Virus record (IMG/VR): IMGVR_UViG_3300036770_007547
Location: 62,001 to 126,000 of that record
Direction: 5' to 3' (one strand)
DNA: 64,000 nucleotides
This document shows, piece after piece, positions 1 through 19,566 of the stretch (position 1 is its first letter; each line of letters begins with the position of its first letter). Under the pieces are notes generated by a model. The model made no database searches. It was not told where the DNA came from and saw only the letters and a program-made list of their open reading frames with translations. Made by a program: the position numbers and the translations under genes.

Positions 1-110
1 CCATACATGTCGCCGTGTATCACACAGGCGCAATCGATGCCATTGTTGGGATCGCGCAGTTCGGTGGGCGTCAATCTTTCGAGAGCTTTCCTGCCAGCCT
101 TTTTAGCCAT
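1..110 (-). CDS. Probable glycosyltransferase, N-terminal part only (runs off the window start)
   Basis: Manual translation from ATG at 110: MAKKAGRKALERLTPTELRDPNNGIDCACVIHGDMY..., open to the edge. Resembles N-termini of phage GT-A proteins; sits in the glycan island. Confidence 0.45.
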   Translation of the reverse strand, partial: MAKKAGRKALERLTPTELRDPNNGIDCACVIHGDMY

Positions 111-931
111 AGTCCTTGTCTAATCTCTTCTACTGTGTATTCGGTGTGACTGATCTCGATCAACCATTGATTCCGATCAGGCACTTCGGCATCTTCGATG
201 TCTGCTATACTTATTGATACCGGATGTGCCAGGCTGGACTGATCCACAACAACGGGTGATCCGCGCAATGCAGCCTGTATGCCCACTCCACTGTTGTAAT
301 TTATCACGGCGTGATAGTCAAACTTGAGATCGTAGGTGTCATACGTGGTGGGGAGTCTGCGCGGACTTTCGATGCGAACATCTCCTGCATAATTTATGCG
401 TTTGTGATTGATGCGGCTGCGCGGGTGTGGTCGTATCACCACTGGACGGTCTGTGTATCTTCGCAGCTCTTGTATGGTGGAATTGATCCAGGATTCCTGG
501 CTGACCATGCTGTCGGTCTGCAGACTCTGTTGATGCTGTGAAGCTATCAATATCGCGGGGTTGGTCTGTGATGTTTCAAACAAGGCCAAGCCCAGTTGTT
601 CGGGTCTTTTGGCATCGAGATCTTCGGTGTGTCCATAATAACCATCGGCCGTGATGTTGTTGATGGCCACCTTCCAAGTGGTGCCACGATGCAGAGCGCC
701 CACATCGACCACGATCACAGGACGGCCTTGATCGACATAGTGTTTGTAAACCGATTGATTGGGTTTCATCCTTCCGTGCCACAGCACGCTCCATATCACG
801 GCAGCATCAGCATCATAAGAACCGTCCACGGTTCTGATACCGGCCGCCCGTGCGCTGTCCAACAGAGCTGACATGGCACTGCCGCTGTTCTGTGCGCATT
901 GGAAAGGAAAATAGGCTAAGGTTTCGATCAC
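71..931 (-). CDS. KpsS/KpsC-like (Capsule_synth) glycosyltransferase-family protein
   Basis: Motifs TDRPVVIRPHP, VINYNSGVGIQAALRGSPV, DRNQWL; paralogous to four neighbouring domains. Confidence 0.6.
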   Translation of the reverse strand: MIETLAYFPFQCAQNSGSAMSALLDSARAAGIRTVDGSYDADAAVIWSVLWHGRMKPNQSVYKHYVDQGRPVIVVDVGALHRGTTWKVAINNITADGYYGHTEDLDAKRPEQLGLALFETSQTNPAILIASQHQQSLQTDSMVSQESWINSTIQELRRYTDRPVVIRPHPRSRINHKRINYAGDVRIESPRRLPTTYDTYDLKFDYHAVINYNSGVGIQAALRGSPVVVDQSSLAHPVSISIADIEDAEVPDRNQWLIEISHTEYTVEEIRQGLWLKRLAGKLSKD

Positions 932-937
932 TAAATA
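932..937 (+). promoter_or_regulatory. T4-like late promoter core TAAATA for the plus-strand three-gene block
   Basis: ctaaata in the short divergent intergenic region upstream of 970. Confidence 0.5.
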
Positions 938-969
938 TCCTCGGTGGTATCGTTTAATTATTCATTGTC

Positions 970-1824
970 ATGGCATCTACAGCAATTAACTGGACCTATC
1001 TCAGCAAAAAAGGCGAGGACGAGTACATCAATCGACTGGCGCACAGCGCCGGTGTCGAGCCCACGGCCATCGAAAACTGGAACTATGGTGTCTGTCCCGA
1101 TCACGGATTGGTGTTGCGTGGCATAATGAAACACAAAATCATGAAACAGTGCTGGCATGATCGTAGACCTTTTCGATACATGGACACCGGATATTTTGGC
1201 AATGCCAAGAGCACTCGTAATCCCAGCGGATTCAAGCTGTGGCATCGCATCGTGGACAATGATCTGCAACATGGAAACTTGGTGGTCAAACGTCCGTTGG
1301 ATCGCTGGGAACAGCATGGTATACCTGTACATGCCCGCCGGCATGGCAGTAAAATCTTGGTTGTTGCGCCCGATGAGAAACCATGCTTGTTCTATGACAC
1401 CACCTTGGAAACCTGGTTGGACAACACAGTGTCGCGCATCAAACAACACACCGATCGTCCCATCGAAATCCGACATCGAGCACGCGATGCTGTCAAAAAC
1501 AATCGCACCAAAGACAAGAGCTTTGACGCTGCACTGGAAGATGATGTGGCCGCGGTGGTCACTTTCAATTCCACTGCCGCGGTGCACAGCGTGATCCGCG
1601 GCGTACCAGTGTATGTCACTGCGCCCACCAATGCAGCCGAGCCGGTGGCCAACGGTGATCTGAGCTCGATCGATGCTCCGGGATTTCCCGATCGTGACGA
1701 AATCATGGCCTGGCTGGCGCATCTCGCTTACGGTCAGTTCCATGTACGCGAACTTGAAAATGGCACTGCCATCAGATTGCTGGAAGAAACACAATATCTA
1801 ATCAAAAGAGGACTACAGTCTTGA
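970..1824 (+). CDS. KpsS/KpsC-like glycosyltransferase-family protein
   Basis: YMDTGYFGN, TDRPIEIR, VVTFNSTAAVHSVIRGVPV; close paralog of the C-terminal half of 4092..5741. Confidence 0.6.
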   Translation: MASTAINWTYLSKKGEDEYINRLAHSAGVEPTAIENWNYGVCPDHGLVLRGIMKHKIMKQCWHDRRPFRYMDTGYFGNAKSTRNPSGFKLWHRIVDNDLQHGNLVVKRPLDRWEQHGIPVHARRHGSKILVVAPDEKPCLFYDTTLETWLDNTVSRIKQHTDRPIEIRHRARDAVKNNRTKDKSFDAALEDDVAAVVTFNSTAAVHSVIRGVPVYVTAPTNAAEPVANGDLSSIDAPGFPDRDEIMAWLAHLAYGQFHVRELENGTAIRLLEETQYLIKRGLQS

Positions 1825-2645
1825 CCTATACCATCGTTACCACGTTTCATGAACCCGGCTTGCAAAAATACGCACAACGCATGATCGACACCTTTGATCG
1901 ATATTGGCCACAGGATGTGAAACTGCGTGCCTATGCCGAAGACTGCGATCCCATGTCACCCAGTGATCGTATTGAAATTTTTGATTTGCACGAATGCTGT
2001 CCCAGCCTGGTAGAATTCAAACAGCGACATCGCGACAATCCTGTGGCCAACGGTGAAGTCATGAAGGACACCGGTGTGCCCTACAAAGACAATCATTTCA
2101 AATGGGATGCCGTGAGATTCAGCAACAAGGTATTTGCCGTGATACACGCCTCACTCAGCACCAACACCGATTGGATGATATGGTTGGATGCTGACACGCT
2201 CACGTTCGATCACATTCCGCCGGGATTCCTGGATTCCATATGCGATCCCGCTGCCATGGCCTGTTATTTGGGTCGCCGAGAAAAGTATCACAGCGAGTGT
2301 GGTTGGGTGGCCTACAATCTACGGCATCCCGACATTACTCAATTCATGCAAGACTGGAAGGATCTCTATGTCAATGACACTATTTTTGATCTCCGCGAGT
2401 ATCATGACAGTTTTGTGTTTGATGTTTTGCGCCGGCGCTACAGTGATCGCGGCACTAGATTCCACAATCTCACTCCGGTACAACCCAATGAAAAGGGACC
2501 GGGTCATCCATTTATCGCATCGCCGCTGGGACGGTACATGGATCATCTCAAAGGTGACACACGCAAGGACATGGGCAAGAGCCAACATCGCGGTGATGAC
2601 ACCAGTTACCAAGTACATCAAGGAGTAGGATATTGGCAGAACTAG
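1821..2645 (+). CDS. GT-A fold nucleotide-diphospho-sugar transferase
   Basis: WDAVRFSNKVFA, DxD motif IWLDAD, YHDSFVFD, C-terminal DHLKG. Confidence 0.7.
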   Translation: MTYTIVTTFHEPGLQKYAQRMIDTFDRYWPQDVKLRAYAEDCDPMSPSDRIEIFDLHECCPSLVEFKQRHRDNPVANGEVMKDTGVPYKDNHFKWDAVRFSNKVFAVIHASLSTNTDWMIWLDADTLTFDHIPPGFLDSICDPAAMACYLGRREKYHSECGWVAYNLRHPDITQFMQDWKDLYVNDTIFDLREYHDSFVFDVLRRRYSDRGTRFHNLTPVQPNEKGPGHPFIASPLGRYMDHLKGDTRKDMGKSQHRGDDTSYQVHQGVGYWQN

Positions 2646-3181
2646 CCGAACACCTGGGCGGTCATCTCAACCGCACCCATACCGATCGTGGAATCCTCAG
2701 ATGGTTCCTGGAAAATCACGACATCCGTTCCATGTTGGATGTTGGATGTGGCCCGGGCGGACAAGTCGAACTGGCCCGCGAATGGGGCATAGATGCCTGG
2801 GGCATCGACGGAGATCACACCTTGGACCGCCCCGGGGACCACTACATCATACACGATTACTGTGTGGGACCCAGCACTTTTGATCGGCCGGTAGATTTGG
2901 TGTGGAGCTGTGAGTTTGTGGAACATGTCGACGAGCAGTATGTTCCAAACTTTGTGGCCGACTTTGCTCGTGGTCGATGGTTGTGCATGAGCTACGCGCC
3001 CCCGGGACATGACGGTCATCATCATGTCAATTGTCAGCCCGAAGACTATTGGATCGAGTGTTTACAACAACACGGCTTTCGTTATCGCTCGGATATCACG
3101 GCACAAGTGCGAAGAGCCAGTACTCAGGCCAAAAAATTCATGCGCAAGCGTGGCCTGGTGTTTGAGTCTACGTTAAGGTAG
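2633..3181 (+). CDS. Class I SAM-dependent methyltransferase
   Basis: MLDVGCGPG motif I; DLVWSCEFVEHV; GHHHVNCQ...YW. Confidence 0.85.
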   Translation: MAELAEHLGGHLNRTHTDRGILRWFLENHDIRSMLDVGCGPGGQVELAREWGIDAWGIDGDHTLDRPGDHYIIHDYCVGPSTFDRPVDLVWSCEFVEHVDEQYVPNFVADFARGRWLCMSYAPPGHDGHHHVNCQPEDYWIECLQQHGFRYRSDITAQVRRASTQAKKFMRKRGLVFESTLR

Positions 3182-4084
3182 TCGTGCTCGCATGAACCGC
3201 CAGGCAGTGCCGTCTCTGACTTCGTTCCAGTCAAAATGACACTGTGCCAGGCGGTGATAAAAAGTATTTCGATCTCCCATCACAGGATTTTCCAACATGG
3301 ACAAGTCGGTGTTGGCATCAGGCCAAGACTGGCTGCGTTGTGGAACCGGATCAGTGACCCAGGCCGGTATACCCCACAACATGCTGGCAACACTGGGACT
3401 GCTGTTATAAGTGATGGTGGCCCAGGCACGGTCGAAATCGGCTCGTATGTCTGGCGATTGGCTTATTTCAATGTCGGGCCAGCGTTTTTGTAGCTCGGGT
3501 ATGATTTGCTGATTTCCCGGATGTGCTCGCAACAGTATGGGTCGATCGCTGTTGGCACGGATCTGTGGCAAGATGCTGTCCAACCATTCCATGACACCAA
3601 ATCCGTCCATGCTCCAACCGCCGTCTCGCTGCAAACAGATCAGTATATTGCGTCCGTTGAGGCGCCATGGTCGTTCTTGGAATCCATAGCTTTTCTTGAT
3701 GTGTTCCCAGCGGGCAGCATCCACGTCTCGGTTGAAATAGTACCCCGTGGTGGGGAATATACCATCCAAGCTGTAGCGCAGGAAACGATCTCGATCGTTG
3801 GGCATGAGAAAGCCATAGAGATTGCTGTCCATGACCAGCACACGTTTTCCGGCTCTACTCTGTGCTTTGATCACGGCCTGCCGCACACGGAGGTGCGGGG
3901 CCGATTTCATGCCAATCCAGCCCTGCAACACTGCCACATCAGCATCGATCACGGTTTGCTCGTCCACTACCCATACCTCGTCGCCGGCTGCTTTGGCGCC
4001 GTGCGCAAACGTCATGAGATATTCGCGCTTTTGTTCCATCTTGGCTTTACTGGGCACAGCCGACAGGTAAACAGCTATTTTCAT
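3173..4084 (-). CDS. KpsS/KpsC-like glycosyltransferase-family protein
   Basis: SDRPILLRAHP, ITYNSSPSVASMLWGIP. Confidence 0.6.
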   Translation of the reverse strand: MKIAVYLSAVPSKAKMEQKREYLMTFAHGAKAAGDEVWVVDEQTVIDADVAVLQGWIGMKSAPHLRVRQAVIKAQSRAGKRVLVMDSNLYGFLMPNDRDRFLRYSLDGIFPTTGYYFNRDVDAARWEHIKKSYGFQERPWRLNGRNILICLQRDGGWSMDGFGVMEWLDSILPQIRANSDRPILLRAHPGNQQIIPELQKRWPDIEISQSPDIRADFDRAWATITYNSSPSVASMLWGIPAWVTDPVPQRSQSWPDANTDLSMLENPVMGDRNTFYHRLAQCHFDWNEVRDGTAWRFMRARLP

Positions 4085-4091
4085 TGATTTG

Positions 4092-5741
4092 TCATCCCCG
4101 GCTTACAGATTCCCAAGCGAATCCACTCTGCATCTCCTGCACTGTGAACTGATGATAGCTGAGACAAGCCATGAGCGCACGAACTTCATCGGTGTCCGGA
4201 CATCGTGGATTTTCGATGTCAGCAAGATTGGTGTTGCTGAGATGGTGTGCGGCATTGGGTCCCATGGTAAACACCGGTTTTCCATATATGAGACTTTCCA
4301 CGGCCGCGATCGAATTAAAGGTGACCATGCAGTGTATGTCATTGGCCAAGGCCATTTCCATGGTGTCCACAGTGGCACGCACCGATCTGTTTTGCTTGAG
4401 CCTGACCACGATCTCACGATCGGTGTGTTGCTTGATCTCGGCAATGGTGTTCTCCAACCAAGACTCTTCTTCCAGACCCCAGTAACTCAATGCCTTGGCG
4501 CTGGGCGGACATATCAGTATCTTGCTGCCCGGAGTCATGGGCTTGATTTTGAGACCGATTCGATCTATGCGATCAGTGGGGCGCTTTTCGATGGCACCCA
4601 ACCATTGCATGGCGTTCTTGGTGATGCGATGCCATTCTTTGCGCTTGTTGTTTCCAAAATAACCGGTGTCGATGTAATAAAAGTCTCGTCCGGTGTCCAG
4701 ACATTGCTGCATGATCTTTTTCTTGGCTATGCTGCGCAATGCTATGGGACTGTCATGCCGTTCGATGTCATTCCAGGGCGACATGCTGCCGGCAGCACCT
4801 TGCACAAAAGCATGCACGATAGGATCCCATCTCGCACCTTTGGTCTTCATTTTCTTTGTAACATCCTCTTCCTCGCTGATACCAATCACTGGCCATTTGT
4901 GACGATCATCCAACCATCTTATCAATTGTGCCCGTGTGGCAGTTTCCCCGTACTTACCATTGGGATTTTCCACATATTCTAGAACATTGGTGAAAAAATG
5001 CTTGTATACCCGTGGAAGATCGAGATCTCGAATCGCTGTCACCGAAGTGTCTATGCGAGATTCGGTGACTTGTTGTTCGTAGAATTTCCAGAGATGACTG
5101 TAATCGCAGTTGCGATAGTTGTCGAACCAAGGCCCACCTTCGGTATAGTGCAGGGCGCTGGGTTTACCGTCCCAGGGCTCGTGATACCATCCCACCAACC
5201 AGTTCCAAGCCGGTGCCAAGGATCCAATGTCGCTGTCGTCCAACCATTCGAATCGATGGAGTCGACTGCCCGGCCATTCGGCGACAGCGGTTTCATCGAG
5301 CTGACGATTCTTGGGATGTTCGCAGTTCCAGAGTATCATGCTTGACCAGTTTTTCCTGGGATAATATTCTTGGCGTTGCCCATCCATCTTGGTCTTGTTC
5401 TGCGGGCGATAGTCATGCTTGACCACCATCACAGCGTAGCGATCATCGGCTTGTTCAAACAGTTTTTCTATGTCATCGATCCAGAGAAAATCACAGTCAC
5501 AGAACACAGCCCACCCACGATACTGCATGAGCTTGGGAACCAAGAATCTAGTGAACGTGAATTCGGTGCTGGCTTTTTCATCGGGCAGTCGAGTGTATAT
5601 TTCTTGGGCTCTCAGATCCTGTTGTTTCAGCATCTGTATGTCAAGCACCGATTCGGTGTTTTCTTCGATGCTGTGTTGACACACGTCTGCTGCTATGGCC
5701 TCTCGACTGTCCCACCCAATGAATACGTTTCTTATGGTCAT
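4092..5741 (-). CDS. Two-domain glycosyltransferase: N-terminal GT8-like/CDI-like GT-A domain plus C-terminal KpsS-like domain
   Basis: FIGWDSRE, STEFTFTRFLVP, FCDCDFL, YPRKNWSS, HYTEGGPWF; second half YIDTGYFGN...VTFNSIAAVES. Confidence 0.75.
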   Translation of the reverse strand: MTIRNVFIGWDSREAIAADVCQHSIEENTESVLDIQMLKQQDLRAQEIYTRLPDEKASTEFTFTRFLVPKLMQYRGWAVFCDCDFLWIDDIEKLFEQADDRYAVMVVKHDYRPQNKTKMDGQRQEYYPRKNWSSMILWNCEHPKNRQLDETAVAEWPGSRLHRFEWLDDSDIGSLAPAWNWLVGWYHEPWDGKPSALHYTEGGPWFDNYRNCDYSHLWKFYEQQVTESRIDTSVTAIRDLDLPRVYKHFFTNVLEYVENPNGKYGETATRAQLIRWLDDRHKWPVIGISEEEDVTKKMKTKGARWDPIVHAFVQGAAGSMSPWNDIERHDSPIALRSIAKKKIMQQCLDTGRDFYYIDTGYFGNNKRKEWHRITKNAMQWLGAIEKRPTDRIDRIGLKIKPMTPGSKILICPPSAKALSYWGLEEESWLENTIAEIKQHTDREIVVRLKQNRSVRATVDTMEMALANDIHCMVTFNSIAAVESLIYGKPVFTMGPNAAHHLSNTNLADIENPRCPDTDEVRALMACLSYHQFTVQEMQSGFAWESVSRG

Positions 5742-6520
5742 TATTTCCTCTCTATGTCATCTTCTTGGCAGTCATCGCCGTACTGTATTTCGACTATGCG
5801 CAATTCTTGGGCAGTCTCGTTGCAGAGGCGGTGCCATTGATTACGAGAGATATGTAGATGCTGGAACTCACTGTAATGCCCGAGATGCTCGATGTCTGTG
5901 CTCTTGTCATCAATGGTATAAACCGATGCTTCACCTTTGCTCACAAACCAGAATTCAGATCGGTTGCTGTGTCGCTGCATGCTGAGACATGTTCCGGGCT
6001 CGACTGTGAGTTCTTTGACCTTGACTTGTGGGCCATCTTCGTGCAGCACACGATAATAGCCCCAGGGCCGGTTTGTCTTGGGTGCTTTCCACTCTTCTAG
6101 TATCCAGCTCGAAGAGTTCTTTTTGTCCTCGCCGCCAACACCGAACTTGAAATCGATGTTTGGGTCCTGTATCGACATCTCGGGGATGTTGTCAGAGGTG
6201 CGATCCCCGCCATTGGCAAAGATGATGCGATTTTGTGGGTAACTGGCCCGCACCATCTCGATGGCCCGGCGTGCCGATCCATCGCTGTCATCGAAGTCGA
6301 TGACGAAATCCACGCCTGTGATGTGTTTGAGTATGTTGCCACGCTCTCTCAAGGGCATGAAAGCACGACCTTTCTTGCGTTCCAACCAAGCATCGCTGTT
6401 GACACCCACTACCAAGATATCGCCCATGGCTTTGGCTGCTTGGAGATAACTGATGTGACCGCTGTGTATGGGGTCAAATCCCCCGGTGACCAATACTACG
6501 ACTTTGTCTTTTTCGTACAT
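5741..6520 (-). CDS. Cytidylyltransferase-like (HxGH) domain fused to a type II mannose-6-phosphate isomerase-like cupin
   Basis: TGGFDPIHSGH, GVNSDAWLERKKG, FANGGDR; RPWGYYRVL...LSMQRHSNRSEFW. Start moved to ATG at 6520 (MYEKDKVV) to avoid overlap. Confidence 0.85.
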   Translation of the reverse strand: MYEKDKVVVLVTGGFDPIHSGHISYLQAAKAMGDILVVGVNSDAWLERKKGRAFMPLRERGNILKHITGVDFVIDFDDSDGSARRAIEMVRASYPQNRIIFANGGDRTSDNIPEMSIQDPNIDFKFGVGGEDKKNSSSWILEEWKAPKTNRPWGYYRVLHEDGPQVKVKELTVEPGTCLSMQRHSNRSEFWFVSKGEASVYTIDDKSTDIEHLGHYSEFQHLHISRNQWHRLCNETAQELRIVEIQYGDDCQEDDIERK

Positions 6521-6522
6521 TG

Positions 6523-8184
6523 TTATTGTTCCTGTTCCTGAAGACGAGAATCTCGCAGCACCCGGGGCCACCAATGCATGAGGTGTTCCCAAGGCAATCC
6601 TGCTTCAATCTCGTCGCGCCGCCACTGTGAATAGCCAAGATTGGCCAACCATTGATCGCGTGGTATATTTAAATTGGGTCGTTCGATGTCTAAAATATTG
6701 TTCTGGCTCACAGGCCAGGCCATTGCGCTCTGATGCAAACAGTAGGTGGGCAATCCATAACAAGCCGATTCAGTGAGGCTGTTGCTGTTTCCTCCCACCA
6801 CTGCCCAGGCTGTATCAAAGTCGCGATACAAACTGTCACCGCCAGATACCCAATTGTCGTCGATGGCGCAACTGTGATCGCTGACCCGCACATCTTTGAT
6901 GGTTTGTATGGCCGATTCGATTATGGGCAACTGCTGCGGCAGCCGGCTGGGATGAAGTCGTATGCGTATGGGACGATTGGTTCGATGCCGTATCATCTTC
7001 AAGGCAGTGAGAACCATGTTTTCGTAACTGCCCCACTTGTTTATGAGCGGGACCATGCTGCTGTCTCGCGGTCTTTGCATCATGAACAACACATCGTCAC
7101 CGCGTGGCTGCCAGGGGTGTATCTCGATGTTCTGTTCTTTTTGTATGCGATGCCATCGATCCGCGGGACTGTCCTGACGGAAATGTATGCCATCGTGATA
7201 GAAATAACTGAACCAACTCCAACGATAGTAGACTTGATCTGATTCGGGACGTGCTTGATTGAAACGGAACGTGGGACTTTCTACCACTATCCAAGGTCGT
7301 CGGCTCTGCGTGATATAATTGTAGCAGTCTCGGTAGCGTTTGGTTCTTTTGTTGTCGGTGTTGTTGTGTATGATCCACAAGTCAGGCAAAGGTTGGTCGC
7401 GTATGTCTTCCAAGTTGGCTTCTTGGATGTTGGTGAATTCAGGCAAAGGCAGTCCTTGCCACCAAGGACCCACCAGAGCCACGGCACGCAGTTCGGGCCT
7501 CACAGTGGCCTCACGCCGGCGAGCCAACACTGTGGCCTGCTTGACCTGTGAGTCGTAGATCTGCAGCATGTTGTCTTTGTTTTTCTGTCGACCTTTCAGT
7601 GTCAGGAATACCCCGGTTCCCTTGCCGATGGCCACCCATTCACCGATGTTTGATATGGGTCGTATATCAAACTCTGGGGCCAATTGTCGCAATACCATTT
7701 GATCGTGTCCGTAGATCCACTGGTCTATGGGAGTATCCAAGAGCCGCTGTCTCAGCACTTTCTTGAAGTCACTGTTGCTGCCAAAGGTCACCGCTCCGGC
7801 CAACCAGTTTTGCTGTTTGTCATGCCACAACATGTGCGGATGGGCAGCGATGCTTTCAAATTCTTCCGGGGTAAATGACCTTGTACACACTGTGTCTATG
7901 TCCAGACTCATCACCAGCTGATCATCATCAAACAGCTCGCTGGCCACCAAGAACCTCAAGGCTTGATAGTAGGCAGCACGATTGTCGTCGTGCAATCGAG
8001 GTGCCTTTACATAGTGGTATCTTGCTCCGGGTACTGGATCCACAGCACCACCCGACACCACCACAGTGATGGACAGCCAGTTGTTGTGTGCCTGTAGGCT
8101 GGTGATGAGATTGGCTGCCCATTCATCATGATATACGGGATCGCAGGCTACCAGTATGTTGTATCGATTTTTGATGTCATTCAC
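6523..8184 (-). CDS. Two-domain glycosyltransferase: GT-A domain plus KpsS-like domain
   Basis: N-terminal SLDID (DxD), W..DQ motif, FLTLKG; C-terminal TNRPIRIRLHP, NSNSLTESACYGLP, RDQWLANLGYSQW. Confidence 0.65.
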   Translation of the reverse strand: MNDIKNRYNILVACDPVYHDEWAANLITSLQAHNNWLSITVVVSGGAVDPVPGARYHYVKAPRLHDDNRAAYYQALRFLVASELFDDDQLVMSLDIDTVCTRSFTPEEFESIAAHPHMLWHDKQQNWLAGAVTFGSNSDFKKVLRQRLLDTPIDQWIYGHDQMVLRQLAPEFDIRPISNIGEWVAIGKGTGVFLTLKGRQKNKDNMLQIYDSQVKQATVLARRREATVRPELRAVALVGPWWQGLPLPEFTNIQEANLEDIRDQPLPDLWIIHNNTDNKRTKRYRDCYNYITQSRRPWIVVESPTFRFNQARPESDQVYYRWSWFSYFYHDGIHFRQDSPADRWHRIQKEQNIEIHPWQPRGDDVLFMMQRPRDSSMVPLINKWGSYENMVLTALKMIRHRTNRPIRIRLHPSRLPQQLPIIESAIQTIKDVRVSDHSCAIDDNWVSGGDSLYRDFDTAWAVVGGNSNSLTESACYGLPTYCLHQSAMAWPVSQNNILDIERPNLNIPRDQWLANLGYSQWRRDEIEAGLPWEHLMHWWPRVLRDSRLQEQEQ

Positions 8185-8945
8185 TGTTGGTCATAGTTTC
8201 TCAATGCCCGATCAAGCCAAGGCAGCACCAAGTCTCTTTGGCGCACTTGGCCATGACGTTGGTAGCTCTGTACCGCAGATTCGGGCAAGAGATCTAATTC
8301 GGCAAGATCCAACCATGTGGTGGTGCGTGGATCTTGCGGCAAGTGTTCGCTGCGATAAACTATGGCATGCAACCAAGGGTCGTCTGACTGTTTGAGAAAG
8401 AATCCATCTCGACAGTCAAAGCCAGATACAGCCAGGGCATGCATGAGACTCACCAATGTCCAATTGTAATACACATGGTCTCTCTGATCAAACGCCTGTG
8501 TGTTGTATTCGATGTTGGTGTATTGCGGCAGTATCAGCACCAACATGCCATTGGCATTCATCATCGATCGCCAATTGCGCAAGGTATCCAGGGGTCTCAG
8601 CGCATATTGGAAAGCGTCATGGCACCATATCACATCGTAGTGATGTCGTAGATCGACTATGGGTTGCTCGAAATCATGACATATGAACCCGGTGTTTCGA
8701 TGTCTCACCACTTGTCCGGGCTCTACTGTGAGGTCCACACCGGTACAACGTATGTTCAACGGCGCCGATCTTTCGTCGCGTGTGGTACGAGTAGACCACC
8801 ATCCCAGGTCTAGGCCTGACCCCGATCCCATGTCGCACACAGTACCAATGCTCTCCATGAAATCATCGTACTCGTACAGTGCTTCAAGTGTGCGCAGGCT
8901 GTGTTCGTGGCTTTCTTGCTCGGATGTAAAATACGTTCTCATCAT
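8181..8945 (-). CDS. Class I SAM-dependent methyltransferase
   Basis: VCDMGSGSG; YDVIWCHDAFQY; NGMLVL. Confidence 0.8.
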   Translation of the reverse strand: MMRTYFTSEQESHEHSLRTLEALYEYDDFMESIGTVCDMGSGSGLDLGWWSTRTTRDERSAPLNIRCTGVDLTVEPGQVVRHRNTGFICHDFEQPIVDLRHHYDVIWCHDAFQYALRPLDTLRNWRSMMNANGMLVLILPQYTNIEYNTQAFDQRDHVYYNWTLVSLMHALAVSGFDCRDGFFLKQSDDPWLHAIVYRSEHLPQDPRTTTWLDLAELDLLPESAVQSYQRHGQVRQRDLVLPWLDRALRNYDQQ

Positions 8946-9394
8946 ACCGATGCATCCTCCATGCCAGCAGTCCTCAATCTAACGATGTGACCACTCATCC
9001 ATTGCTTGCTGTCCAGACCCTTCATGATGCCCAACCACCGATTGCGTAGATAGGCCACTTCGTTGATGATGGTTTCAAAGTCAATGACTTCGTCTTCGCC
9101 GTCCACGTATTTCTCAGCATCACGAGCCGTGAGTGCCCGGGCATAGCCTTCCAGATATTTCTGGAAGTGTCGCCTGCGTATCTTCCTGAGCTGTATGTTG
9201 AGATAGTTGAGCACGGCTTCGATCTCTTGGAGTTGATTGAATCTGAACTCGGTGATGCCCGGGAGTTCTTTGATGTTGCGCTCCACCAACCCCCCGATTC
9301 GGCATTCTGCTTTGGCTGACTCAAGCTCGTTTTCATAGTGCGTGATGAAATCAGGGATGGCACCAAGATCGCTGGTGATTCGTCTAAGCCACAT
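8942..9394 (-). CDS. uvsY: Recombination mediator UvsY-like protein
   Basis: YLEGYARALTARDAEKYVDGE...KGLDSKQW...LRTAGMED; near uvsX. Start moved to MWLRR at 9394. Confidence 0.8.
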   Translation of the reverse strand: MWLRRITSDLGAIPDFITHYENELESAKAECRIGGLVERNIKELPGITEFRFNQLQEIEAVLNYLNIQLRKIRRRHFQKYLEGYARALTARDAEKYVDGEDEVIDFETIINEVAYLRNRWLGIMKGLDSKQWMSGHIVRLRTAGMEDASV

Positions 9395-10646
9395 TTTTTG
9401 CCTCGTCGAGATAGGTAGTAAATTGTTCGAGCCATGGAAAAAGTTCTCTCCAATTGGTGCCACGACGTCGGTCTTTCTCGTCGAGGTACACCAATAGATT
9501 CCGTATCTGTTCAGGCACCGGTCCGGTGCTCCGACTCTTTAGGTATATACCATGCATGTTGGCCCAGGCCAAACGATTTTCATCAGTGTCTTGTGGCATG
9601 AGTCCTAGTATTTCTTGCCAGCGATCTTCAAACACATCACCGCCCAAGATGTTGATCTTGAGATACTCGGGATTGGGGCTGGCATCTGAAAACCAGTGCC
9701 CGATGTGCCGTTGTTTCCGCCATTCTGCCAATCGTCGCAGCAACTCGGGCATAGAGGGCAGTGTGAGTGGGGTGATGGTCTGGCTGATGTGCAATTTCAA
9801 CCACGGTTGTTGGCACAGATATTCAAAATTTTCTTGCCATTGTTTGAGATCTATGCCCCATCGCACATATTCTTGTTCAGGCCCCCAACAGTCGATGCTG
9901 GCGCTGACATCGATACGGCGAAGACGCTCGTTCAGGATCAACTGCTTCCATTGTTCCACATAGGATTCCAATCGAGATCTGGGTATCATGAGATTGGTGA
10001 CCACATTGAGATCGCAGTCAGGATTGGGCTGTTGCCAGATACGATCCAGCAGCTCCTGGAACTCGCGCATCAACAACGGTTCCCCGCCCAAGACATGCAG
10101 CCTGCGCAGTTTGGGAAAGCCGGTTTCAAACCATTTCCAGAACGACGGTGCTAAATCCCGATACTGATTTTGATGCGGTTCCAGTCGTACTCCCAGTTTC
10201 TGGAACGCACCGTGTTTGATGTTTTCTTGATTGATGCTGCTGCTGAGCCTGGGACTGCAATACAAGCATGCGAGGTTACAGGTGTTGCTGAACAACACAT
10301 CTATCACTGTGGGGTCGACTTGGGTGGCAGTGGCATCAGCATCCAGCTCGGGTGGACTGATCCTAGGCATGTCTAGATGCCGCATGCGATCACTGACTCC
10401 ACCTTCTTGCTCGATGCCACGACAATATCCACAATTGGTGTCAGGCCAGTCACCACGTAACATGGCCTCACGATCGGTTATTTTCGATTCAGTGTTGTGG
10501 AATTGGTCAAAGTTTTCGGGAGTGATCGTTGACAACGAAGTACGCCAGCAACTGGCTGTGGTGCCCGAATTGAGGTACAGGGTGCTCCAGGCCCATTTGA
10601 GCTGGCAGGCTGTGGCAGTGCGTATCGGGAAAACACGATCTGGCAC
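9384..10646 (-). CDS. Radical SAM protein with an N-terminal Twitch/SPASM-like Cys cluster
   Basis: CNLACLYC (CxxxCxxC), GGEPLL, SIDCWG..EYVRWG; N-terminal C..KW...SC...CGYC. Confidence 0.85.
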   Translation of the reverse strand: MPDRVFPIRTATACQLKWAWSTLYLNSGTTASCWRTSLSTITPENFDQFHNTESKITDREAMLRGDWPDTNCGYCRGIEQEGGVSDRMRHLDMPRISPPELDADATATQVDPTVIDVLFSNTCNLACLYCSPRLSSSINQENIKHGAFQKLGVRLEPHQNQYRDLAPSFWKWFETGFPKLRRLHVLGGEPLLMREFQELLDRIWQQPNPDCDLNVVTNLMIPRSRLESYVEQWKQLILNERLRRIDVSASIDCWGPEQEYVRWGIDLKQWQENFEYLCQQPWLKLHISQTITPLTLPSMPELLRRLAEWRKQRHIGHWFSDASPNPEYLKINILGGDVFEDRWQEILGLMPQDTDENRLAWANMHGIYLKSRSTGPVPEQIRNLLVYLDEKDRRRGTNWRELFPWLEQFTTYLDEAKNVA

Positions 10647-10892
10647 TCAATCTTCCTCGTAATCCTCTTCGTCATAGTCGTAGTCATCGCCATCATCACC
10701 GCCATCATCACCAAATTGATCGAGACTGCGTTTGATGTCGGTGTCGCCACGGAAAGCATCACGAATCTCTTGGCTTGACACATCGTTGTCGATCAGAATA
10801 TTCACCAACGAATCGGCTGCTTCAGTGCGATCAGTGACGATGATAAATCTCTTGAGCTCTTCCCAAGCATCTGCTACTAGATTCAAAGACAT
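10647..10892 (-). CDS. Small acidic hypothetical protein downstream of uvsX
   Basis: 81-aa ORF with SD (GGAG) and a D/E-rich tail; tiles between neighbours. Confidence 0.7.
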   Translation of the reverse strand: MSLNLVADAWEELKRFIIVTDRTEAADSLVNILIDNDVSSQEIRDAFRGDTDIKRSLDQFGDDGGDDGDDYDYDEEDYEED

Positions 10893-10901
10893 TTTTGCTC
10901 C

Positions 10902-11957
10902 TTATTGTTGTTCAGTTTCTTCTTCTTTGTTGGTGGTGGCCGGTTCCTGGAAATCGCGCATGACTTTGTCCAAACAGCCATCCTCGTTGGATTCCCATCC
11001 TTTGCGAAAGTATTTGATGATCTCACCATCTGAGGTCACAAACATCAGCTTGTTGCCATCCTTTTTCAACATGCCTTTCTTTTCAGCAAGATCCACCAAG
11101 CCTGAATAGGGATTCATGCCGGTCTCGTAAGGGATCTTGACCTGCACGCCTTCAAATGGTTTGGCATAGCGTGTTTTCATGACCTTACAAGCCGATCTGA
11201 TGCCCATGACATCGGAGATCTTGTTGCCATCTTCGTCCTCTTTGAGCTTGAGCTTGCGCATGGCTACCACGATGCTTGATGCATAGATAAAGCCCTGGCC
11301 GCCCGAGATCTTGTCATCGGGGTCGAACATGTCTTGGCTGGCATAGGTATGGTTGGTACAAACCATGCCTACTCCATATGCGCCAAACATATTTACACAA
11401 TTTCGCACCAAAGCTGTGAGGCTCTTGGCCTTGCGACCCAGATCACCCTTCATGTCACCGCTCTCAAATTGGTTCACGTCCGTGGGTGTCAGCAACATGC
11501 CCAAGCTGTCGATCACAAACAACACCTTGGGTCGATCTTCTGCGGCCAGGGACTTGTAGTCGCTCATGAACGTGGAGATGGTCTTGGCTACATCATCCAC
11601 CATGGCCATGCTGAGTTTGAGCAGCTTGCCTTCGTCGGTGCTCACTCCTAGAGCATGCAACCATGCTTCGTCGAGAGCATTTTCTGTGTCCACCAACACC
11701 ACGAAGATGCCCTGTTCCTGAGCATTCTTGATGATGTTTCCGCTGCAGATATAGCTCTTGCCTGCACCCGACTCGCCGGCGAACACAGTGACCTTGCCCA
11801 GTGGGATGCCACGATTGAAGTCACCCGAGATCAGGTAGTTGAGTGCGTAGTTGCCGGTGCTGATCCAGTCAGTGGGATCATTGAAGCCGATGCTGAGACC
11901 ATCAATACTTTTGGTGATCTCTTTGCGGAATTTGCTTACATCAAACGGTTTAGCCAT
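10902..11957 (-). CDS. uvsX: RecA-like recombinase UvsX
   Basis: Walker A GESGAGKS, DTENALD, VIDSLG, NHTY, SGGQGFIYASS. Confidence 0.95.
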   Translation of the reverse strand: MAKPFDVSKFRKEITKSIDGLSIGFNDPTDWISTGNYALNYLISGDFNRGIPLGKVTVFAGESGAGKSYICSGNIIKNAQEQGIFVVLVDTENALDEAWLHALGVSTDEGKLLKLSMAMVDDVAKTISTFMSDYKSLAAEDRPKVLFVIDSLGMLLTPTDVNQFESGDMKGDLGRKAKSLTALVRNCVNMFGAYGVGMVCTNHTYASQDMFDPDDKISGGQGFIYASSIVVAMRKLKLKEDEDGNKISDVMGIRSACKVMKTRYAKPFEGVQVKIPYETGMNPYSGLVDLAEKKGMLKKDGNKLMFVTSDGEIIKYFRKGWESNEDGCLDKVMRDFQEPATTNKEEETEQQ

Positions 11958-11999: not shown

Positions 12000-12028
12000 A
12001 GTATACTGCATTTATTCCCAGCTGTCAA
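12000..12028 (-). promoter_or_regulatory. Sigma70-type early/middle promoter for uvsX
   Basis: TTGACA-17 nt-TATACT on the minus strand. Confidence 0.85.
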
Positions 12029-13211: not shown

Positions 13212-14181
13212 GGTACTGATACCTCAAAGTCATGTGATGTTCGAGGTCCCCGCTGTAAAACCAGTCATAGTTGTGTTCGATGTTGTCAAGCTCGATTTGA
13301 TAGAGATCTCTCCAGTCCGCGGAATCCAAGTTGGAAAATCTAGACAGCATGTCCAACAGCAAAACCAGGCGCTTGACTGGATTGGGCTCGAGATCGAAAC
13401 TGTAGTCAAAAACTCCGCGATAGAGCCGGAATCCCCAATAGCGTTCGAGATAATGATGCCAACCGGGTTGAGCATAGGCCACAAACAATCCACGAGTGGA
13501 GATGCTGTGGAGGAATTTTTCAGTGATGAATGGCTCGTGCGTGGTAGACATGCTCTCGCTGACCACATGCACGAAACTGGTGGTCAAGGCCGATTCCAAC
13601 ACTTGTGCATTGTGCTCATGGCGTCCGCGATCATAGTTCATGGAATTCTGGACTGAAAAAAACTCGGGACTGTTTTTCCCAATGAAAAATTTGCGCCAGT
13701 ATCGATCATCGCTGCCAGTGAAATCTTGTATGTGCCCGTCCACGATGGCAGAGTCAAATGCGAAATTTTTGGTCACTCTCAAGGCATCGTACCAGCCGCG
13801 TCGATGCAAGGCTGCGGTGAGCAACCGACGTCCCACGTGCGGACTACCATTGAAACTGCAAAGAAAAGCCTGGAACTTGTGATCTGGATGCACGCGATAA
13901 CTCAACATGCGTTGCCAGAGGTATTCACGTATGATGTTTACCGGATAAGAAAGGCTGATGTGTGGATAGTTGCACTGTATGTGCGGCAAGGGAAGATATG
14001 GTGTAGACACACAGAGCGTGCGTCCCCGGCGCTGTGCTTCGCCTTCGATGCGATCTAATATGAGATTTCTTCCTCGATGATCGATGCCATCGAGATGATC
14101 GCCCAGCAAAAAGACATCCGGCAGTTGGGCTAGATCTGCCGGAGTCTTGGTTTCATTCCAGGGAGGTTGTATGCAAAGCAT
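13204..14181 (-). CDS. Hypothetical protein with a GT10-like 'E...TEK' domain (paralog of 12012..13211)
   Basis: TSFVHVVSES...FITEKFLHSI...GF..Y..VFDYSFD. Confidence 0.5.
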   Translation of the reverse strand: MLCIQPPWNETKTPADLAQLPDVFLLGDHLDGIDHRGRNLILDRIEGEAQRRGRTLCVSTPYLPLPHIQCNYPHISLSYPVNIIREYLWQRMLSYRVHPDHKFQAFLCSFNGSPHVGRRLLTAALHRRGWYDALRVTKNFAFDSAIVDGHIQDFTGSDDRYWRKFFIGKNSPEFFSVQNSMNYDRGRHEHNAQVLESALTTSFVHVVSESMSTTHEPFITEKFLHSISTRGLFVAYAQPGWHHYLERYWGFRLYRGVFDYSFDLEPNPVKRLVLLLDMLSRFSNLDSADWRDLYQIELDNIEHNYDWFYSGDLEHHMTLRYQYHE

Positions 14182-15554: not shown

Positions 15555-15578
15555 TTGTAACTCCTATGTTATATCACT

Positions 15579-16556
15579 TCATTTAGCCGCGATGCGTGGC
15601 TTGGCCCGAAATTCATCCACAGTGGCCAGATAACTACCACACTCACAGCGACCTTTGTAGCTGTAAGAGATATAGTCACCGAGATCGTTGTTGAATATGG
15701 GCAACGTCCAGATATTGGTGAAAAACGAGCGACCATCACGATAAGTCATGTGCGTGAAATCTTCGTTGAAATGCTGGTGTCCGTGGCGGCAGGTCCACAT
15801 GATCTGCCCGATTTCACTGCTGCCATATATGTCATAGATATCGTCCACGCCAAACGCATCCATGAGTCGTTGTTTGTCGGTGATATGACCACCGGTGCTG
15901 ATGATGGCACGGGGTTGTCTTGTAAAGTATTTGCGTGGTTCCATGTCGGCCAATCGATGCAGTTTGCTGGGCGTGCTCATGAACACTGTGACACCGTGAT
16001 CGCGTATGCGCTCTAGTTTGCGTTTCAAACTGGAACTGCGCTCGATGATGACTCGGGCACCGATCACCAGTTGTGCTGCTTCCTCCATGACACGGAATCC
16101 GGCTTGCATGGTTCCCAGGGCCGTGGTCAAAAACACATCATCGTGATCCATGCCCAAGGCCAGCATACCACGTGCTGTGCAGGCCAGGGTTTTCCACCAA
16201 TCGTCTTGGCGATAAGGGAACAATTTGACCGGACCAGTGCTGCCGCTAGAGGTCACTAGATATTCACCAGACTCTAACACTCCGTATGGAGGATCCGACA
16301 ATTGATTGTTGAGCCAGCGATCGGTGGTGGTTTCGGGAACCACACCCAGGTGTTCTGGACTCGTGACCGTGTGATCTCCAAACCAGAAATCACGAGTCAC
16401 CGAGTCCAACTTGTCCAGCGTGTGCATCCAGTTTTGGTCGCGTCGTTGCAACACATGTTCTCGACTCACTAGATGCGCTTGTGAGTCCAACAAAAGTCTC
16501 TGTCGTACCAGCCTGGATAGATCAGAGTATGCGATGTTCGAGGCTGGTTCGATCAT
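15579..16556 (-). CDS. Phenylacetate-CoA ligase (PaaK/CapK)-like adenylate-forming enzyme, apparently lacking the C-terminal lid domain
   Basis: TSSGSTGP P-loop, STPS, YDIYGSSEIG, GRCECGS. Start set at MIEP (16556), which has a GGAGG SD. Confidence 0.75.
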   Translation of the reverse strand: MIEPASNIAYSDLSRLVRQRLLLDSQAHLVSREHVLQRRDQNWMHTLDKLDSVTRDFWFGDHTVTSPEHLGVVPETTTDRWLNNQLSDPPYGVLESGEYLVTSSGSTGPVKLFPYRQDDWWKTLACTARGMLALGMDHDDVFLTTALGTMQAGFRVMEEAAQLVIGARVIIERSSSLKRKLERIRDHGVTVFMSTPSKLHRLADMEPRKYFTRQPRAIISTGGHITDKQRLMDAFGVDDIYDIYGSSEIGQIMWTCRHGHQHFNEDFTHMTYRDGRSFFTNIWTLPIFNNDLGDYISYSYKGRCECGSYLATVDEFRAKPRIAAK

Positions 16557-17163: not shown

Positions 17164-17164
17164 G

Positions 17165-18154: not shown

Positions 18155-18170
18155 AATAGAAGTTTCCTTT

Positions 18171-18214: not shown

Positions 18215-18220
18215 GCACTG

Positions 18221-18250: not shown

Positions 18251-18263
18251 GCACTTTCGTTGA

Positions 18264-18290: not shown

Positions 18291-18297
18291 CCCGGTA

Positions 18298-19557: not shown

Positions 19558-19566
19558 GAGCTTCTC

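What the first reader, a model, noticed from the sequence alone, without database searches (positions are those of the whole stretch)
1..8945. Glycan-synthesis island with five paralogous KpsS/KpsC-like domains
Seen: ORFs 71, 970, 3173 and the C-halves of 4092 and 6523 share (T/S)DR(P/E)I..R.., T.NS....A...G.P and DR..W...L...Q....E...G..W. Three keep the HP motif (RPHP, RAHP, RLHP) and two do not. They are mixed with GT-A domains, two methyltransferases and a nucleotidyltransferase-cupin fusion. Established: HP and T.NS motifs mark the KpsS/KpsC beta-Kdo transferases (GT107). Inference: a phage-expanded, diverged GT family that builds a complex methylated glycan, probably on the virion.
Basis: partly seen in the sequence, partly recalled or inferred. 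Interest (0 to 1): 0.65.

Follow-up and report, generated by a model that had tools for sequence, protein, structure and literature searches.

The report
Phage glycan island with KpsC-like transferases
An uncultured giant phage carries a 9-kb block of sugar-building genes, including five copies of a virus-only enzyme family shaped like the bacterial enzymes that add the acidic sugar Kdo to capsules; the block probably makes a methylated glycan, but what the glycan is attached to is still unknown.

Summary
Window 71-8945 encodes five paralogous domains: all ten pairs give phmmer E <= 6e-9. Three carry R-x-H-P and two do not. With them are three GT-A-like domains, two SAM methyltransferases and a nucleotidyltransferase-cupin fusion.

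Membership of GT107 is not shown. Pfam Capsule_synth fails. The defining QXXXD nucleophile motif is present only in the C-half of ORF 6523-8184; two copies keep Q and HP without the Asp, and two have lost Q, Asp and HP.

The family is large (about 4,900 clusters at 50% identity), has almost no Pfam coverage and is essentially virus-restricted. It occurs as 2-6 copies at one fixed site (uvsX-uvsY / helicase) across a lineage of Rak2-like jumbo phages. The expansion is therefore old, not specific to this phage.

All island proteins are soluble, and no export genes, hydroxymethylase, TET enzyme or CMP-sugar synthetase was found. A virion target is plausible but untested. Host envelope lipid and DNA remain rivals.

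The parts
71..931 (-). P0001, 286 aa. KpsC-like GT-B paralog of clade P1. It keeps R167-P-H-P, Q of the Q-region, N-S and the N-domain Asp76. It has no Asp at Q+4.
970..1824 (+). P0002, 284 aa. KpsC-like GT-B paralog of the HP-less clade P2 (R-H-R-A in place of R-x-H-P, P-D-E-K in place of Q-x-x-x-D). It keeps Arg168, N-S and Asp72.
1821..2645 (+). P0006, 274 aa. Probable GT-A (nucleotide-diphospho-sugar transferase) with a D-A-D motif. No Pfam hit.
   Evidence: Atlas feature score 0.96 to viral GT8/Nucleotid_trans clusters. Matching genes are present in related islands.
2633..3181 (+). Class-I SAM methyltransferase, 182 aa.
   Evidence: Pfam Methyltransf_23 E 5e-7 and Methyltransf_11
3173..4084 (-). 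P0003, 303 aa. KpsC-like GT-B paralog of clade P3. It has R186-A-H-P, Q152-R-D-G-G (no Asp at Q+4), N227-S-S and Asp86.
4092..4847 (-). C-half of P0004 (residues about 299-549). KpsC-like GT-B, HP-less clade P4C (R-L-K-Q). It is the closest paralog of P0002.
   Evidence: Pfam Capsule_synth gives only 11.2 bits, E 0.02.
5037..5741 (-). N-half of P0004 (residues 1-235). GT8-like GT-A domain with a D-C-D motif. It is a separate gene in relatives.
   Evidence: Pfam GT8 E 0.0016, below cut-off. phrog_28018 E 1.5e-54. Split 226-aa GT8 gene in L008. GT8 hits among related loci.
5741..6520 (-). Nucleotidyltransferase-cupin fusion (the ORF runs to 6592; the probable start is the ATG at 6518-6520). The N-half is an HldC/RfaE-domain-II-like HIGH-family nucleotidyltransferase with an H-x-G-H motif. 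The C-half is a type-II phosphomannose-isomerase-like cupin.
   Evidence: Best PDB match is 5x9q (BpHldC), E 4e-12. CTP_transf_like and MannoseP_isomerase are the commonest island families in the tally of 11 related loci (10 and 11 genes). No cultured phage has the fusion.
6523..7401 (-). C-half of P0005 (residues about 262-553). KpsC-like GT-B, clade P5C. It is the only domain with the full motif set: Q370-R-P-R-D374, R409-L-H-P, N466-S and Glu302.
   Evidence: The clade of 38 homologues has QxPxD 38/38, RxHP 38/38 and NS 37/38.
7540..8184 (-). N-half of P0005 (residues 1-215). Probable GT-A/GT8-like domain with a D-I-D motif.
   Evidence: Atlas structure TM 0.62-0.71 to GT8 clusters, and to a viral two-domain cluster that carries Capsule_synth. 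No Pfam hit.
8181..8945 (-). Class-I SAM methyltransferase, 254 aa.
   Evidence: Pfam Methyltransf_11/12/23
8942..11957 (-). Flank on the same strand with no long gaps: uvsY-like (8942-9463), twitch radical SAM (9384-10646) and uvsX/RecA-like (10902-11957). A sigma-70-like site (11 of 12) lies at 12028-12000.

Best explanation
The island is a self-contained cytoplasmic glycan assembly line. It is conserved in a lineage of uncultured Rak2-like jumbo myoviruses.

Shown:
- It encodes eight glycosyltransferase domains. Five belong to a virus-restricted GT-B family whose whole-length fold is closest to the retaining beta-Kdo transferases KpsC, WbbB and KrkA. Three are GT-A/GT8-like.
- It also encodes two SAM methyltransferases and a fusion of an HldC-like nucleotidyltransferase with a phosphomannose-isomerase-like cupin.
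- All are soluble proteins.
- The five GT-B domains fall into old clades with different catalytic motifs.

Inferred:
- Each domain adds a different residue or linkage.
- The P0005 C-domain (QxPxD + RxHP + NS) transfers an ulosonic acid such as Kdo from a host-made CMP-sugar through a covalent Asp374 adduct, as KpsC, WbbB and KrkA do.
- P0001 and P0003 keep the carboxylate-binding Gln and the CMP-binding RxHP but lack the Asp. They probably still use a CMP-ulosonic acid, by a different and probably inverting mechanism.
- P0002 and the P0004 C-domain have lost Gln, Asp and His together. They keep the base-binding Arg, the phosphate-binding Ser and the N-domain acidic residue, so they probably use another nucleotide sugar.
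- The fusion enzyme supplies an activated manno-configured hexose or heptose.
- The methyltransferases O-methylate the product.

Least certain step: the acceptor. I put it on phage structural proteins at about 40%.
For: Paralogy.

Fold:
- hhalign of clade P2 against clade P3: probability 99.9%, 260 columns.

Sequence link: the family profile's only PDB hit below E 0.1 is WbbB, E 0.013, aligned on R-x-H-P and N-S.

Motifs:
- Their definitions come from PMC12887879 and PMC10148158.
- Among 148 diverse representatives, HP and Q co-occur: 92 with both, 51 with neither, 5 mixed. Arg/Lys is present in 148/148 and the N-domain Asp/Glu in 144/148.

The clades are old: tree support 0.96-1.0 and the split HP-bearing against HP-less.

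Conserved island: 2-6 copies per locus in 83 loci. The position is fixed, gp32-uvsX-uvsY-[island]-helicase. Related islands also carry FkbM, GXM and Methyltransf_24 methyltransferases, sulfotransferases and epimerases/dehydratases.

Nucleotidyltransferase: best PDB match is BpHldC. NCBIfam rfaE_dom_II E 1.6e-21.

Soluble proteins: maximum 19-residue hydropathy <= 1.17.

For a virion acceptor:
- No lipid-carrier, flippase or export domain turned up in the island or in 142 genes from 11 related loci.
- The same orthologous enzyme set is kept across phages from many different metagenomes, which suggests a conserved acceptor.
- In Caulobacter phage CcrSC two family members sit with a methyltransferase and a GT9 heptosyltransferase-like gene directly after the tail-fibre genes.
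- In a 42.7-kb podovirus a member lies beside the terminase, portal and capsid genes.
- Precedents: PBCV-1 A064R, a GT-GT-methyltransferase acting on capsid glycans (PMC7826918), and mycobacteriophage virion glycosylation (Freeman et al. 2023, cited in PMC12619734).
Against: - No activity, donor or acceptor has been measured.
- Catalytic-residue equivalence rests on sequence register and secondary structure (Q follows the first strand of the C-domain; Asp-to-His spacing is 37 residues against 33-34 in WbbB and KrkA). It does not rest on a residue-level superposition.
- Pfam Capsule_synth does not accept any of the five.
- The held 64% of the genome and five related partial records contain no CMP-Kdo/CMP-NeuAc synthetase. 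The own record also has no NeuB. A CMP-ulosonic donor would therefore have to come from the host, and the host is unknown.
- Against a virion acceptor: the minus-strand genes run on from uvsX/uvsY behind a sigma-70-like site, which points to early rather than late expression. The solved relatives all act on lipid-linked glycans. The literature reads similar jumbo-phage clusters as modification of host surface polysaccharide (PMC7824862).
- The 'TibC' label in the podovirus record is not confirmed by Pfam.
Confidence: 0.5

Rival explanations
1. The same enzymes act on a host envelope lipid. They would act at the cytoplasmic face of the inner membrane, on phosphatidylglycerol-linked or undecaprenyl-linked capsule or O-antigen intermediates. 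The host's own export machinery would then display the altered glycan, for example to block superinfection.
For: All solved structural neighbours (KpsC, WbbB, KrkA) work on lipid-linked glycans. The island is contiguous with early-type genes behind a sigma-70-like site. Iyer et al. interpret jumbo-phage clusters of HIGH nucleotidyltransferases, cupins and paralogous GTs in this way (PMC7824862), and cyanophage papers do the same (PMC12801897). Phosphatidylglycerol would be an acceptor independent of the host species, which fits the conservation.
Against: No protein has a hydrophobic segment. [quoted passage not shown] No priming transferase, ABC transporter, flippase or ligase was seen. In two cultured phages, family members adjoin structural genes.
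Confidence: 0.3
2. The island hypermodifies the phage DNA with a glycan on a hydroxymethylated pyrimidine.
For: The island sits between replication genes (DnaB, primase, helicase) and recombination genes (uvsY, uvsX). Phage clusters are known to put Kdo and heptose on 5hmC, the heptose cluster with a 'CTP transf.' nucleotidyltransferase (bioRxiv 10.1101/2023.12.21.572611). A relative carries a faint 2OG-Fe(II) oxygenase hit in its island.
Against: Neither the own record (222 kb) nor five related records (812 kb in all) contain a thymidylate-synthase-family hydroxymethylase or a Tet/JBP enzyme, and the own record has no C5-methylase. All of these records are partial, and the Tet_JBP control rang in no control genome above its cut-off. 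The methyltransferases are small-molecule class-I types, and relatives add FkbM, GXM and sulfotransferase genes typical of sugar decoration. Eight GT domains is far more than known DNA glycans need. T4 beta-glucosyltransferase is not among the top 50 fold matches.
Confidence: 0.08
3. All five domains are ordinary GT107 beta-Kdo transferases that polymerise Kdo.
For: Shared fold. R-x-H-P in three of them. A weak Capsule_synth hit to one domain and to 1 of 148 relatives.
Against: The QXXXD nucleophile motif, invariant in GT99, GT107 and GT140, is present in only one of the five. It is absent from clades P1 (1/50), P3 (1/84), P2 (0/122) and P4C (0/57). HP is absent from two clades. Pfam Capsule_synth is far below its cut-off.
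Confidence: 0.04
4. The HP-less copies (P0002 and the P0004 C-half) are catalytically dead. They would serve as acceptor-binding or scaffolding partners of the active copies.
For: They have lost Gln, Asp and His together.
Against: This is the largest and best conserved clade (2,020 homologues of P0002). It keeps the motif Arg (148/148 in the family sample) and the N-domain acidic residue (144/148); the phosphate-site Ser is nearly invariant (>= 90%) and a Glu/Asp occupies the ribose site in 105/148. Lys or Arg regularly replaces the His, which looks like a change of donor rather than decay.
Confidence: 0.08

Closest known systems
KpsC (GT107), E. coli and Thermosulfurimonas; retaining beta-Kdo transferases of the capsule linker
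   Different: Sequence identity is 8-12%. Pfam Capsule_synth does not recognise the phage proteins. The QXXXD Asp is present in only one of the five. There is no duplicated-module architecture and no C-terminal membrane anchor. The phage modules are instead fused to GT8-like domains or stand alone.
WbbB N-terminal domain (GT99), Raoultella terrigena O-antigen terminator
   Different: WbbB is about 400 residues with extra insertions and is part of a three-GT protein. It acts on undecaprenyl-linked O-antigen and has the invariant Q...D232.
KrkA GT140 module, E. coli K13 capsule (PMC12887879)
   Different: KrkA keeps QXXXD and HP. The phage clades lose them in defined combinations.
Chlorovirus PBCV-1 capsid-glycan machinery (A064R, A111/114R)
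   Same: Virus-encoded, soluble, multi-domain GT and GT-methyltransferase proteins that build a methylated glycan in the cytoplasm without host glycosylation machinery.
   Different: It belongs to a eukaryotic virus and uses different GT families. Its acceptor (the major capsid protein) is proven there and unknown here.
Jumbo-phage and cyanophage 'capsular polysaccharide modification' clusters (PMC7824862; PMC12801897)
   Same: Clusters of HIGH-family nucleotidyltransferases, cupin isomerases, epimerases and several paralogous GTs. The NT half is about 50% identical to cyanophage genes annotated as heptose-1-P adenylyltransferase or TagD.
   Different: I found no description of those clusters containing the KpsC-like family. 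The NT-cupin fusion occurs in no cultured phage. This island sits at a fixed core-genome position.
Type-II PMI-GMP bifunctional enzymes (AlgA/ManC) and HldC/RfaE domain II
   Same: The cupin half matches the PMI C-terminal domain (E 9e-21). The NT half matches HldC (E 4e-12). The overall logic, nucleotidyltransferase plus isomerase in one chain, is that of AlgA/ManC.
   Different: The nucleotidyltransferase is of the HIGH (cytidylyltransferase-like) fold rather than the NTP_transferase fold of AlgA/ManC. Scores lie far below the equivalog cut-offs (76.6 vs 181.5 bits), so the substrate is not assigned.

Membership tests
Retaining beta-Kdo glycosyltransferases (GT99 / GT107 / GT140) | Modified GT-B fold shared by KpsC, WbbB and KrkA | tested here: met
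Retaining beta-Kdo glycosyltransferases (GT99 / GT107 / GT140) | QXXXD motif: Asp nucleophile and carboxylate-binding Gln after the first strand of the C-domain | tested here: not met
   Met only by the P0005 C-half (QRPRD; 38/38 in its clade). P0001 and P0003 have Q but no Asp at +4 (clades 1/50 and 1/84). P0002 and P0004-C have neither (0/122, 0/57). The register comes from sequence alignment, not from a superposition.
Retaining beta-Kdo glycosyltransferases (GT99 / GT107 / GT140) | (K/R)XHP CMP-binding motif | tested here: inconclusive
   Met in three of the five (RPHP, RAHP, RLHP). Not met in two (R-H-R-A, R-L-K-Q), although the Arg is kept in all. The motif is also shared with sialyltransferases, so it is not specific.
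Retaining beta-Kdo glycosyltransferases (GT99 / GT107 / GT140) | Ser pair / N-S phosphate-binding loop | tested here: met
   N-S is invariant in the five. The Ser is nearly invariant (>= 90%) in 148 representatives. It aligns to WbbB 'NSS'.
Retaining beta-Kdo glycosyltransferases (GT99 / GT107 / GT140) | Sequence-family membership (Pfam PF05159 Capsule_synth) | tested here: not met
   No hit at E <= 10 for four domains. The best is 11.2 bits against a cut-off of 20 for P0004-C. 1 of 148 relatives hits, at E 4e-4.
Retaining beta-Kdo glycosyltransferases (GT99 / GT107 / GT140) | CMP-beta-Kdo donor, net retention, covalent Asp-Kdo adduct | not testable with these tools
   Needs enzyme assays or mass spectrometry of a D374C variant.
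Bacterial GT-B sialyltransferases (GT38/52/80) | HP motif plus a whole-length fold match | tested here: inconclusive
Phage DNA sugar-hypermodification clusters | A hydroxymethylpyrimidine-forming enzyme (ThyS-like, or C5-MT + 5mYOX/TET) in the genome, usually adjacent | tested here: not met
   None in the own 222 kb. No ThyS-family or Tet/JBP hit in five related records; C5-methylase was searched only in the own record. All records are partial (31-64% complete).
Jumbo-phage glycan ('capsular polysaccharide modification') clusters of Iyer et al. 2021 | HIGH nucleotidyltransferase, cupin isomerase and several paralogous GTs in one neighbourhood | tested here: met
GT8 (N-half of P0004) | Pfam PF01501 above threshold, DXD motif | tested here: inconclusive
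   18.5 bits against a cut-off of 24.3. D-C-D is present. GT8-like genes in related loci hit GT8 (E down to 4e-8; unmarked hit in L008).

The most novel reading that the evidence does not exclude
The island defines a large, unnamed, virus-only branch of the Kdo/sialyl-transferase fold. Within it the retaining double-displacement machinery (Gln, Asp, His) has been dismantled stepwise to give new mechanisms and donors. Together the copies would build an ulosonic-acid- and heptose-containing, O-methylated glycan directly on virion proteins of phages that infect Gram-negative bacteria. That would be the first self-encoded virion glycan of this kind outside actinophages and giant algal viruses.
Probability: 0.2. 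Interest if true: 0.75.

Novelty: new variant of a known kind. Interest (0 to 1): 0.55.

Why it matters
Retaining beta-Kdo transferases are a small, recently solved group (GT99, GT107, GT140) known only from bacterial capsules and O-antigens. This work finds about 4,900 sequence clusters of a phage-restricted relative that Pfam essentially does not cover.

The family has natural variants that keep, partly lose or fully lose the catalytic triad of motifs. That is a ready-made series for studying how a double-displacement glycosyltransferase changes mechanism and donor.

For phage biology, the island is a conserved, costly (about 9 kb) glycan pathway at a fixed core-genome site in an abundant aquatic and subsurface jumbo-phage lineage. 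Finding its acceptor (virion, host envelope or DNA) would show a new way in which large phages use sugars. Cultured carriers exist in a tractable host (Caulobacter phages CcrSC and CcrBL9), so the question can be tested directly.

Tried and rejected
- Megablast of the island against 50,697 phage records: no match.
- The ortholog-only profile A2 against PDB gave only chance hits. Only family-wide profiles reach WbbB.
- phmmer of the P0005 C-half, the P0004 N-half and P0006 against PDB: nothing useful.
- BLASTP of P0006 against the two other GT-A-like domains: not significant. The three are not shown to be paralogs of one another.
With A5 it returned only five MAG contigs, which look like binned phage DNA.
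- The 'moraphage' paper (PMC12619734) describes another lineage.
- No RNA run holds the stretch, so there is no expression evidence.
The viral fold library (BFVD) was never searched.
- I rejected the idea that phage-made CMP-sugars feed the family: no CTP_transf_3 hit in the own or five related records, and no NeuB in the own record.
- I rejected recent expansion in this phage: the clades are orthologous across the lineage.
- The podovirus 'TibC' annotation could not be confirmed by Pfam, so it is not used as evidence.

Full report
**Where the window lies.** The window is bases 62,001-126,000 of a 222,775-bp IMG/VR virus record that CheckV rates 64% complete. The sample is labelled a subsurface metagenome. 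Its UvsX-like recombinase is 61-69% identical to those of the Rak2-like giant myoviruses: Sinorhizobium Phosso, Agrobacterium Atu_ph07, Pectobacterium CBB and Cronobacter GAP32. The window also holds a large terminase and a 1,134-aa tail sheath. GC content is even at 0.49-0.55, with no break at the island.

**The observation.**
- The five domains are the only matches to P0003 in the record.
- All ten pairs are significant by phmmer, E 1e-53 to 6e-9 per comparison.
- The alignment has twelve invariant columns, including N-S, G.P and E...G.
- RPHP, RAHP and RLHP are present in ORFs 71, 3173 and 6523. ORFs 970 and 4092 read R-H-R-A and R-L-K-Q at that place.
- Small corrections: the N-S to G.P spacing is one residue longer than written. 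ORF 6523 has TNRP rather than (T/S)DRP, and 'PRD' rather than 'DR'.
- The two methyltransferases and the nucleotidyltransferase-cupin fusion are confirmed by Pfam and NCBIfam. The fusion probably begins at the ATG at 6518-6520.
- The three 'GT-A' domains are supported unevenly. They are not detectably paralogous to each other.

**Membership.** The literature defines the retaining Kdo transferases by an invariant QXXXD motif (Asp nucleophile, Gln binding the Kdo carboxylate) together with (K/R)XHP and a Ser pair at the CMP phosphate. (K/R)XHP is shared with sialyltransferases (PMC12887879; PMC10148158).

In the window only the C-half of ORF 6523 has all three: QRPRD, RLHP and NS. In its clade of 38 homologues QxPxD and RxHP are invariant.

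I took 317 domains from 83 related loci and assigned each to its nearest window paralog:

| Clade | RxHP | Q | Asp at Q+4 |
|---|---|---|---|
| P1 (ORF 71) | 50/50 | 50/50 | 1/50 |
| P3 (ORF 3173) | 84/84 | 84/84 | 1/84 |
| P2 (ORF 970) | 0/122 | 0/122 | 0/122 |
| P4C (ORF 4092 C-half) | 0/57 | 0/57 | 0/57 |

In P2 and P4C a Lys or Arg usually replaces the His.

A tree of 355 domains splits cleanly into HP-less {P2, P4C} and HP-bearing {P1, P3, P5C} (support 0.99). P1+P3 form a clade (support 1.0) beside P5C.

Among 148 diverse representatives, HP and Q go together: 92 have both, 51 have neither and 5 are mixed. The motif Arg/Lys is present in 148/148, the phosphate-site Ser is nearly invariant (>= 90%), and the N-domain Asp/Glu is present in 144/148.

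Pfam Capsule_synth does not reach threshold on any domain. The family profile finds WbbB alone in the PDB, at E 0.013. My reading is same fold and same ancestry, but the five are not shown to be GT107 members, and four of them lack the feature that defines the retaining mechanism.

**Size and range of the family.** A profile of the five domains finds 4,913 clusters (at 50% identity) at E <= 0.001 among 1.84 billion proteins.
- P0002 alone has 2,020 homologues and P0003 has 848. All are unnamed, and some lie on contigs up to 366 kb.
- Only 4 of 148 representatives touch Pfam DUF6716 and one touches Capsule_synth.
- In 185,579 species' genomes the P2 clade occurs on five MAG contigs only.
- Among cultured phages it is found only distantly: Pelagibacter phage Mosig (two HP-less copies), the giant Caulobacter siphoviruses (CcrSC gp170 with RPHP and gp171 HP-less), and a 42.7-kb podovirus.
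- The cultured Rak2-like phages lack it.

**The island is a lineage feature.** Eighty IMG/VR loci carrying a P0003 orthologue hold 2-6 family copies each. The position is always the same: gp32, uvsX, uvsY, then the island, then a helicase. The recurrent core is NT-cupin, GT8-like, one to three P2/P4C copies, P3, a P0006-like GT-A, and P1.

The five largest related records are 31-56% complete at 115-199 kb, so they too are jumbo phages. The GT8 + P4C fusion of the window is two genes in L008, but the fused form recurs elsewhere.

A Pfam tally of 142 neighbouring genes from 11 loci gives the NT and cupin domains (10 and 11 genes), FkbM methyltransferase (7), GT8 (7) and Methyltransf_23 (5). It also gives NAD-dependent epimerases/dehydratases, GXM-type and Methyltransf_24 methyltransferases, and sulfotransferases. 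This is the make-up of a pathway that builds and decorates a glycan.

**Donors.** The nucleotidyltransferase half is closest to heptose-1-phosphate adenylyltransferase: PDB 5x9q, BpHldC, E 4e-12, and rfaE_dom_II E 1.6e-21, well below the equivalog cut-off. It is about 50% identical to cyanophage genes annotated as heptose or glycerol-3-P nucleotidyltransferases.

The cupin half matches the isomerase domain of bifunctional PMI-GMP enzymes. Phosphomannose isomerase chemistry (ketose-6-P to manno-aldose-6-P) is the hexose counterpart of the first step of heptose synthesis. From this I infer an activated mannose or glycero-manno-heptose. The CcrSC cluster contains a GT9 heptosyltransferase-like gene, which fits that inference. 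No CMP-Kdo/CMP-NeuAc synthetase was found in the own or five related records, and no NeuB in the own record. Any CMP-ulosonic acid would therefore be host-made.

**Acceptor.** Three candidates remain.

1. *Virion proteins.*
   - All island proteins are soluble.
   - No carrier-lipid, flippase or export function was seen.
   - The orthologous enzyme set is conserved across phages from many samples.
   - In CcrSC the cluster directly follows the tail-fibre genes. In the podovirus it adjoins the terminase, portal and capsid genes.
   - PBCV-1 and mycobacteriophages are precedents.
2. *Host envelope lipid.*
   - Every solved relative acts on a lipid-linked glycan.
   - The minus-strand genes continue from uvsX behind an 11-of-12 sigma-70-like site.
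   - This is the reading in the literature for similar clusters.
3. *DNA.*
   - The position among replication and recombination genes favours it, as do known Kdo and heptose adducts on 5hmC.
   - Against it, no hydroxymethylase or TET enzyme appears in about 1 Mb of partial genomes, and no C5-methylase in the own record. The decoration enzymes are sugar-type, and T4 beta-glucosyltransferase is not among the fold matches.

My estimates are virion about 0.4, host envelope about 0.3, DNA about 0.1, and the remainder something else.

**Verdict.** The fold claim is right. The GT107 assignment and the 'motifs mark KpsC/KpsS' premise are too strong, and the virion target is untested.

The thing itself is a conserved glycan-synthesis island of a jumbo-phage lineage. 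It is built around a large, unnamed, virus-only offshoot of the Kdo-transferase fold with graded loss of the catalytic motifs. It is a new variant of known kinds (phage glycan clusters; the KpsC/WbbB/KrkA superfamily). It can be tested with standard biochemistry and in cultured Caulobacter phages.

Noticed in passing
window 14181-21568 (- strand): Two tandem triads of [AMP-binding adenylate-forming enzyme][NeuD/PglB/VioB-family sugar acyltransferase][membrane transporter]. The first is 20147-21568, 19567-20163 and an MFS metabolite/H+ symporter at 18298-19557. The second is 15579-16604, 16522-17163 and a sodium:solute symporter at 14181-15554. A gp32 gene (17165-18211) lies between them. Phage-encoded transporters are unusual. 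It is absent at this place in relative L008.
   Followed up: partly
window 9384-10646 (-): A twitch-domain radical SAM protein (NCBIfam N_Twi_rSAM, E 9e-69) is inserted between uvsY and uvsX. Relatives have uvsX directly beside uvsY. Its function is unknown.
   Followed up: no
window 12000-12028 (-): A sigma-70-like site (TTGACA, 17 nt, TATACT; 11 of 12) lies just upstream of uvsX. No convincing terminator follows down to 3173, so the minus-strand island genes may be co-transcribed with recombination genes. Promoter-like sites overall are not above chance in the region.
   Followed up: no
window 4092-5741 versus L008:8326-10001: The GT8-like and KpsC-like halves of P0004 are one ORF here and two adjacent genes (226 and 347 aa) in a 337-kb relative. 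Fused forms of about 550 aa recur among the family representatives.
   Followed up: partly
L091 (Caulobacter phage CcrSC, gp169-gp174): A small related cluster lies right after the tail-fibre genes: a weak MptE/Maf-like domain (gp169, below cut-off), two family members (gp170 with RPHP, gp171 HP-less), a Methyltransf_23 methyltransferase (gp173) and a GT9 heptosyltransferase-like protein (gp174, 26.7 bits, over cut-off). This is a tractable system for testing the family.
   Followed up: partly
L010 (Pelagibacter phage Mosig, genes 185-191): A T4-like pelagiphage carries two HP-less family members with two methyltransferases, a GT8, another GT and a sulfotransferase, set among primase, RNR and RuvC genes. 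Its make-up resembles the island in the window.
   Followed up: partly
L094, L095 (Haliscomenobacter MAG contigs, one of 148 kb): These contigs, filed under a bacterial MAG, carry three to four family copies each. They look like jumbo-phage contigs binned into the MAG.
   Followed up: no
L006 (46 to 62 kb of the record, upstream of the window): A replication module lies directly upstream of the island: DnaB-like helicase, Toprim primase, an SF2 helicase, an AAA ATPase and a DUF6267 protein.
   Followed up: partly
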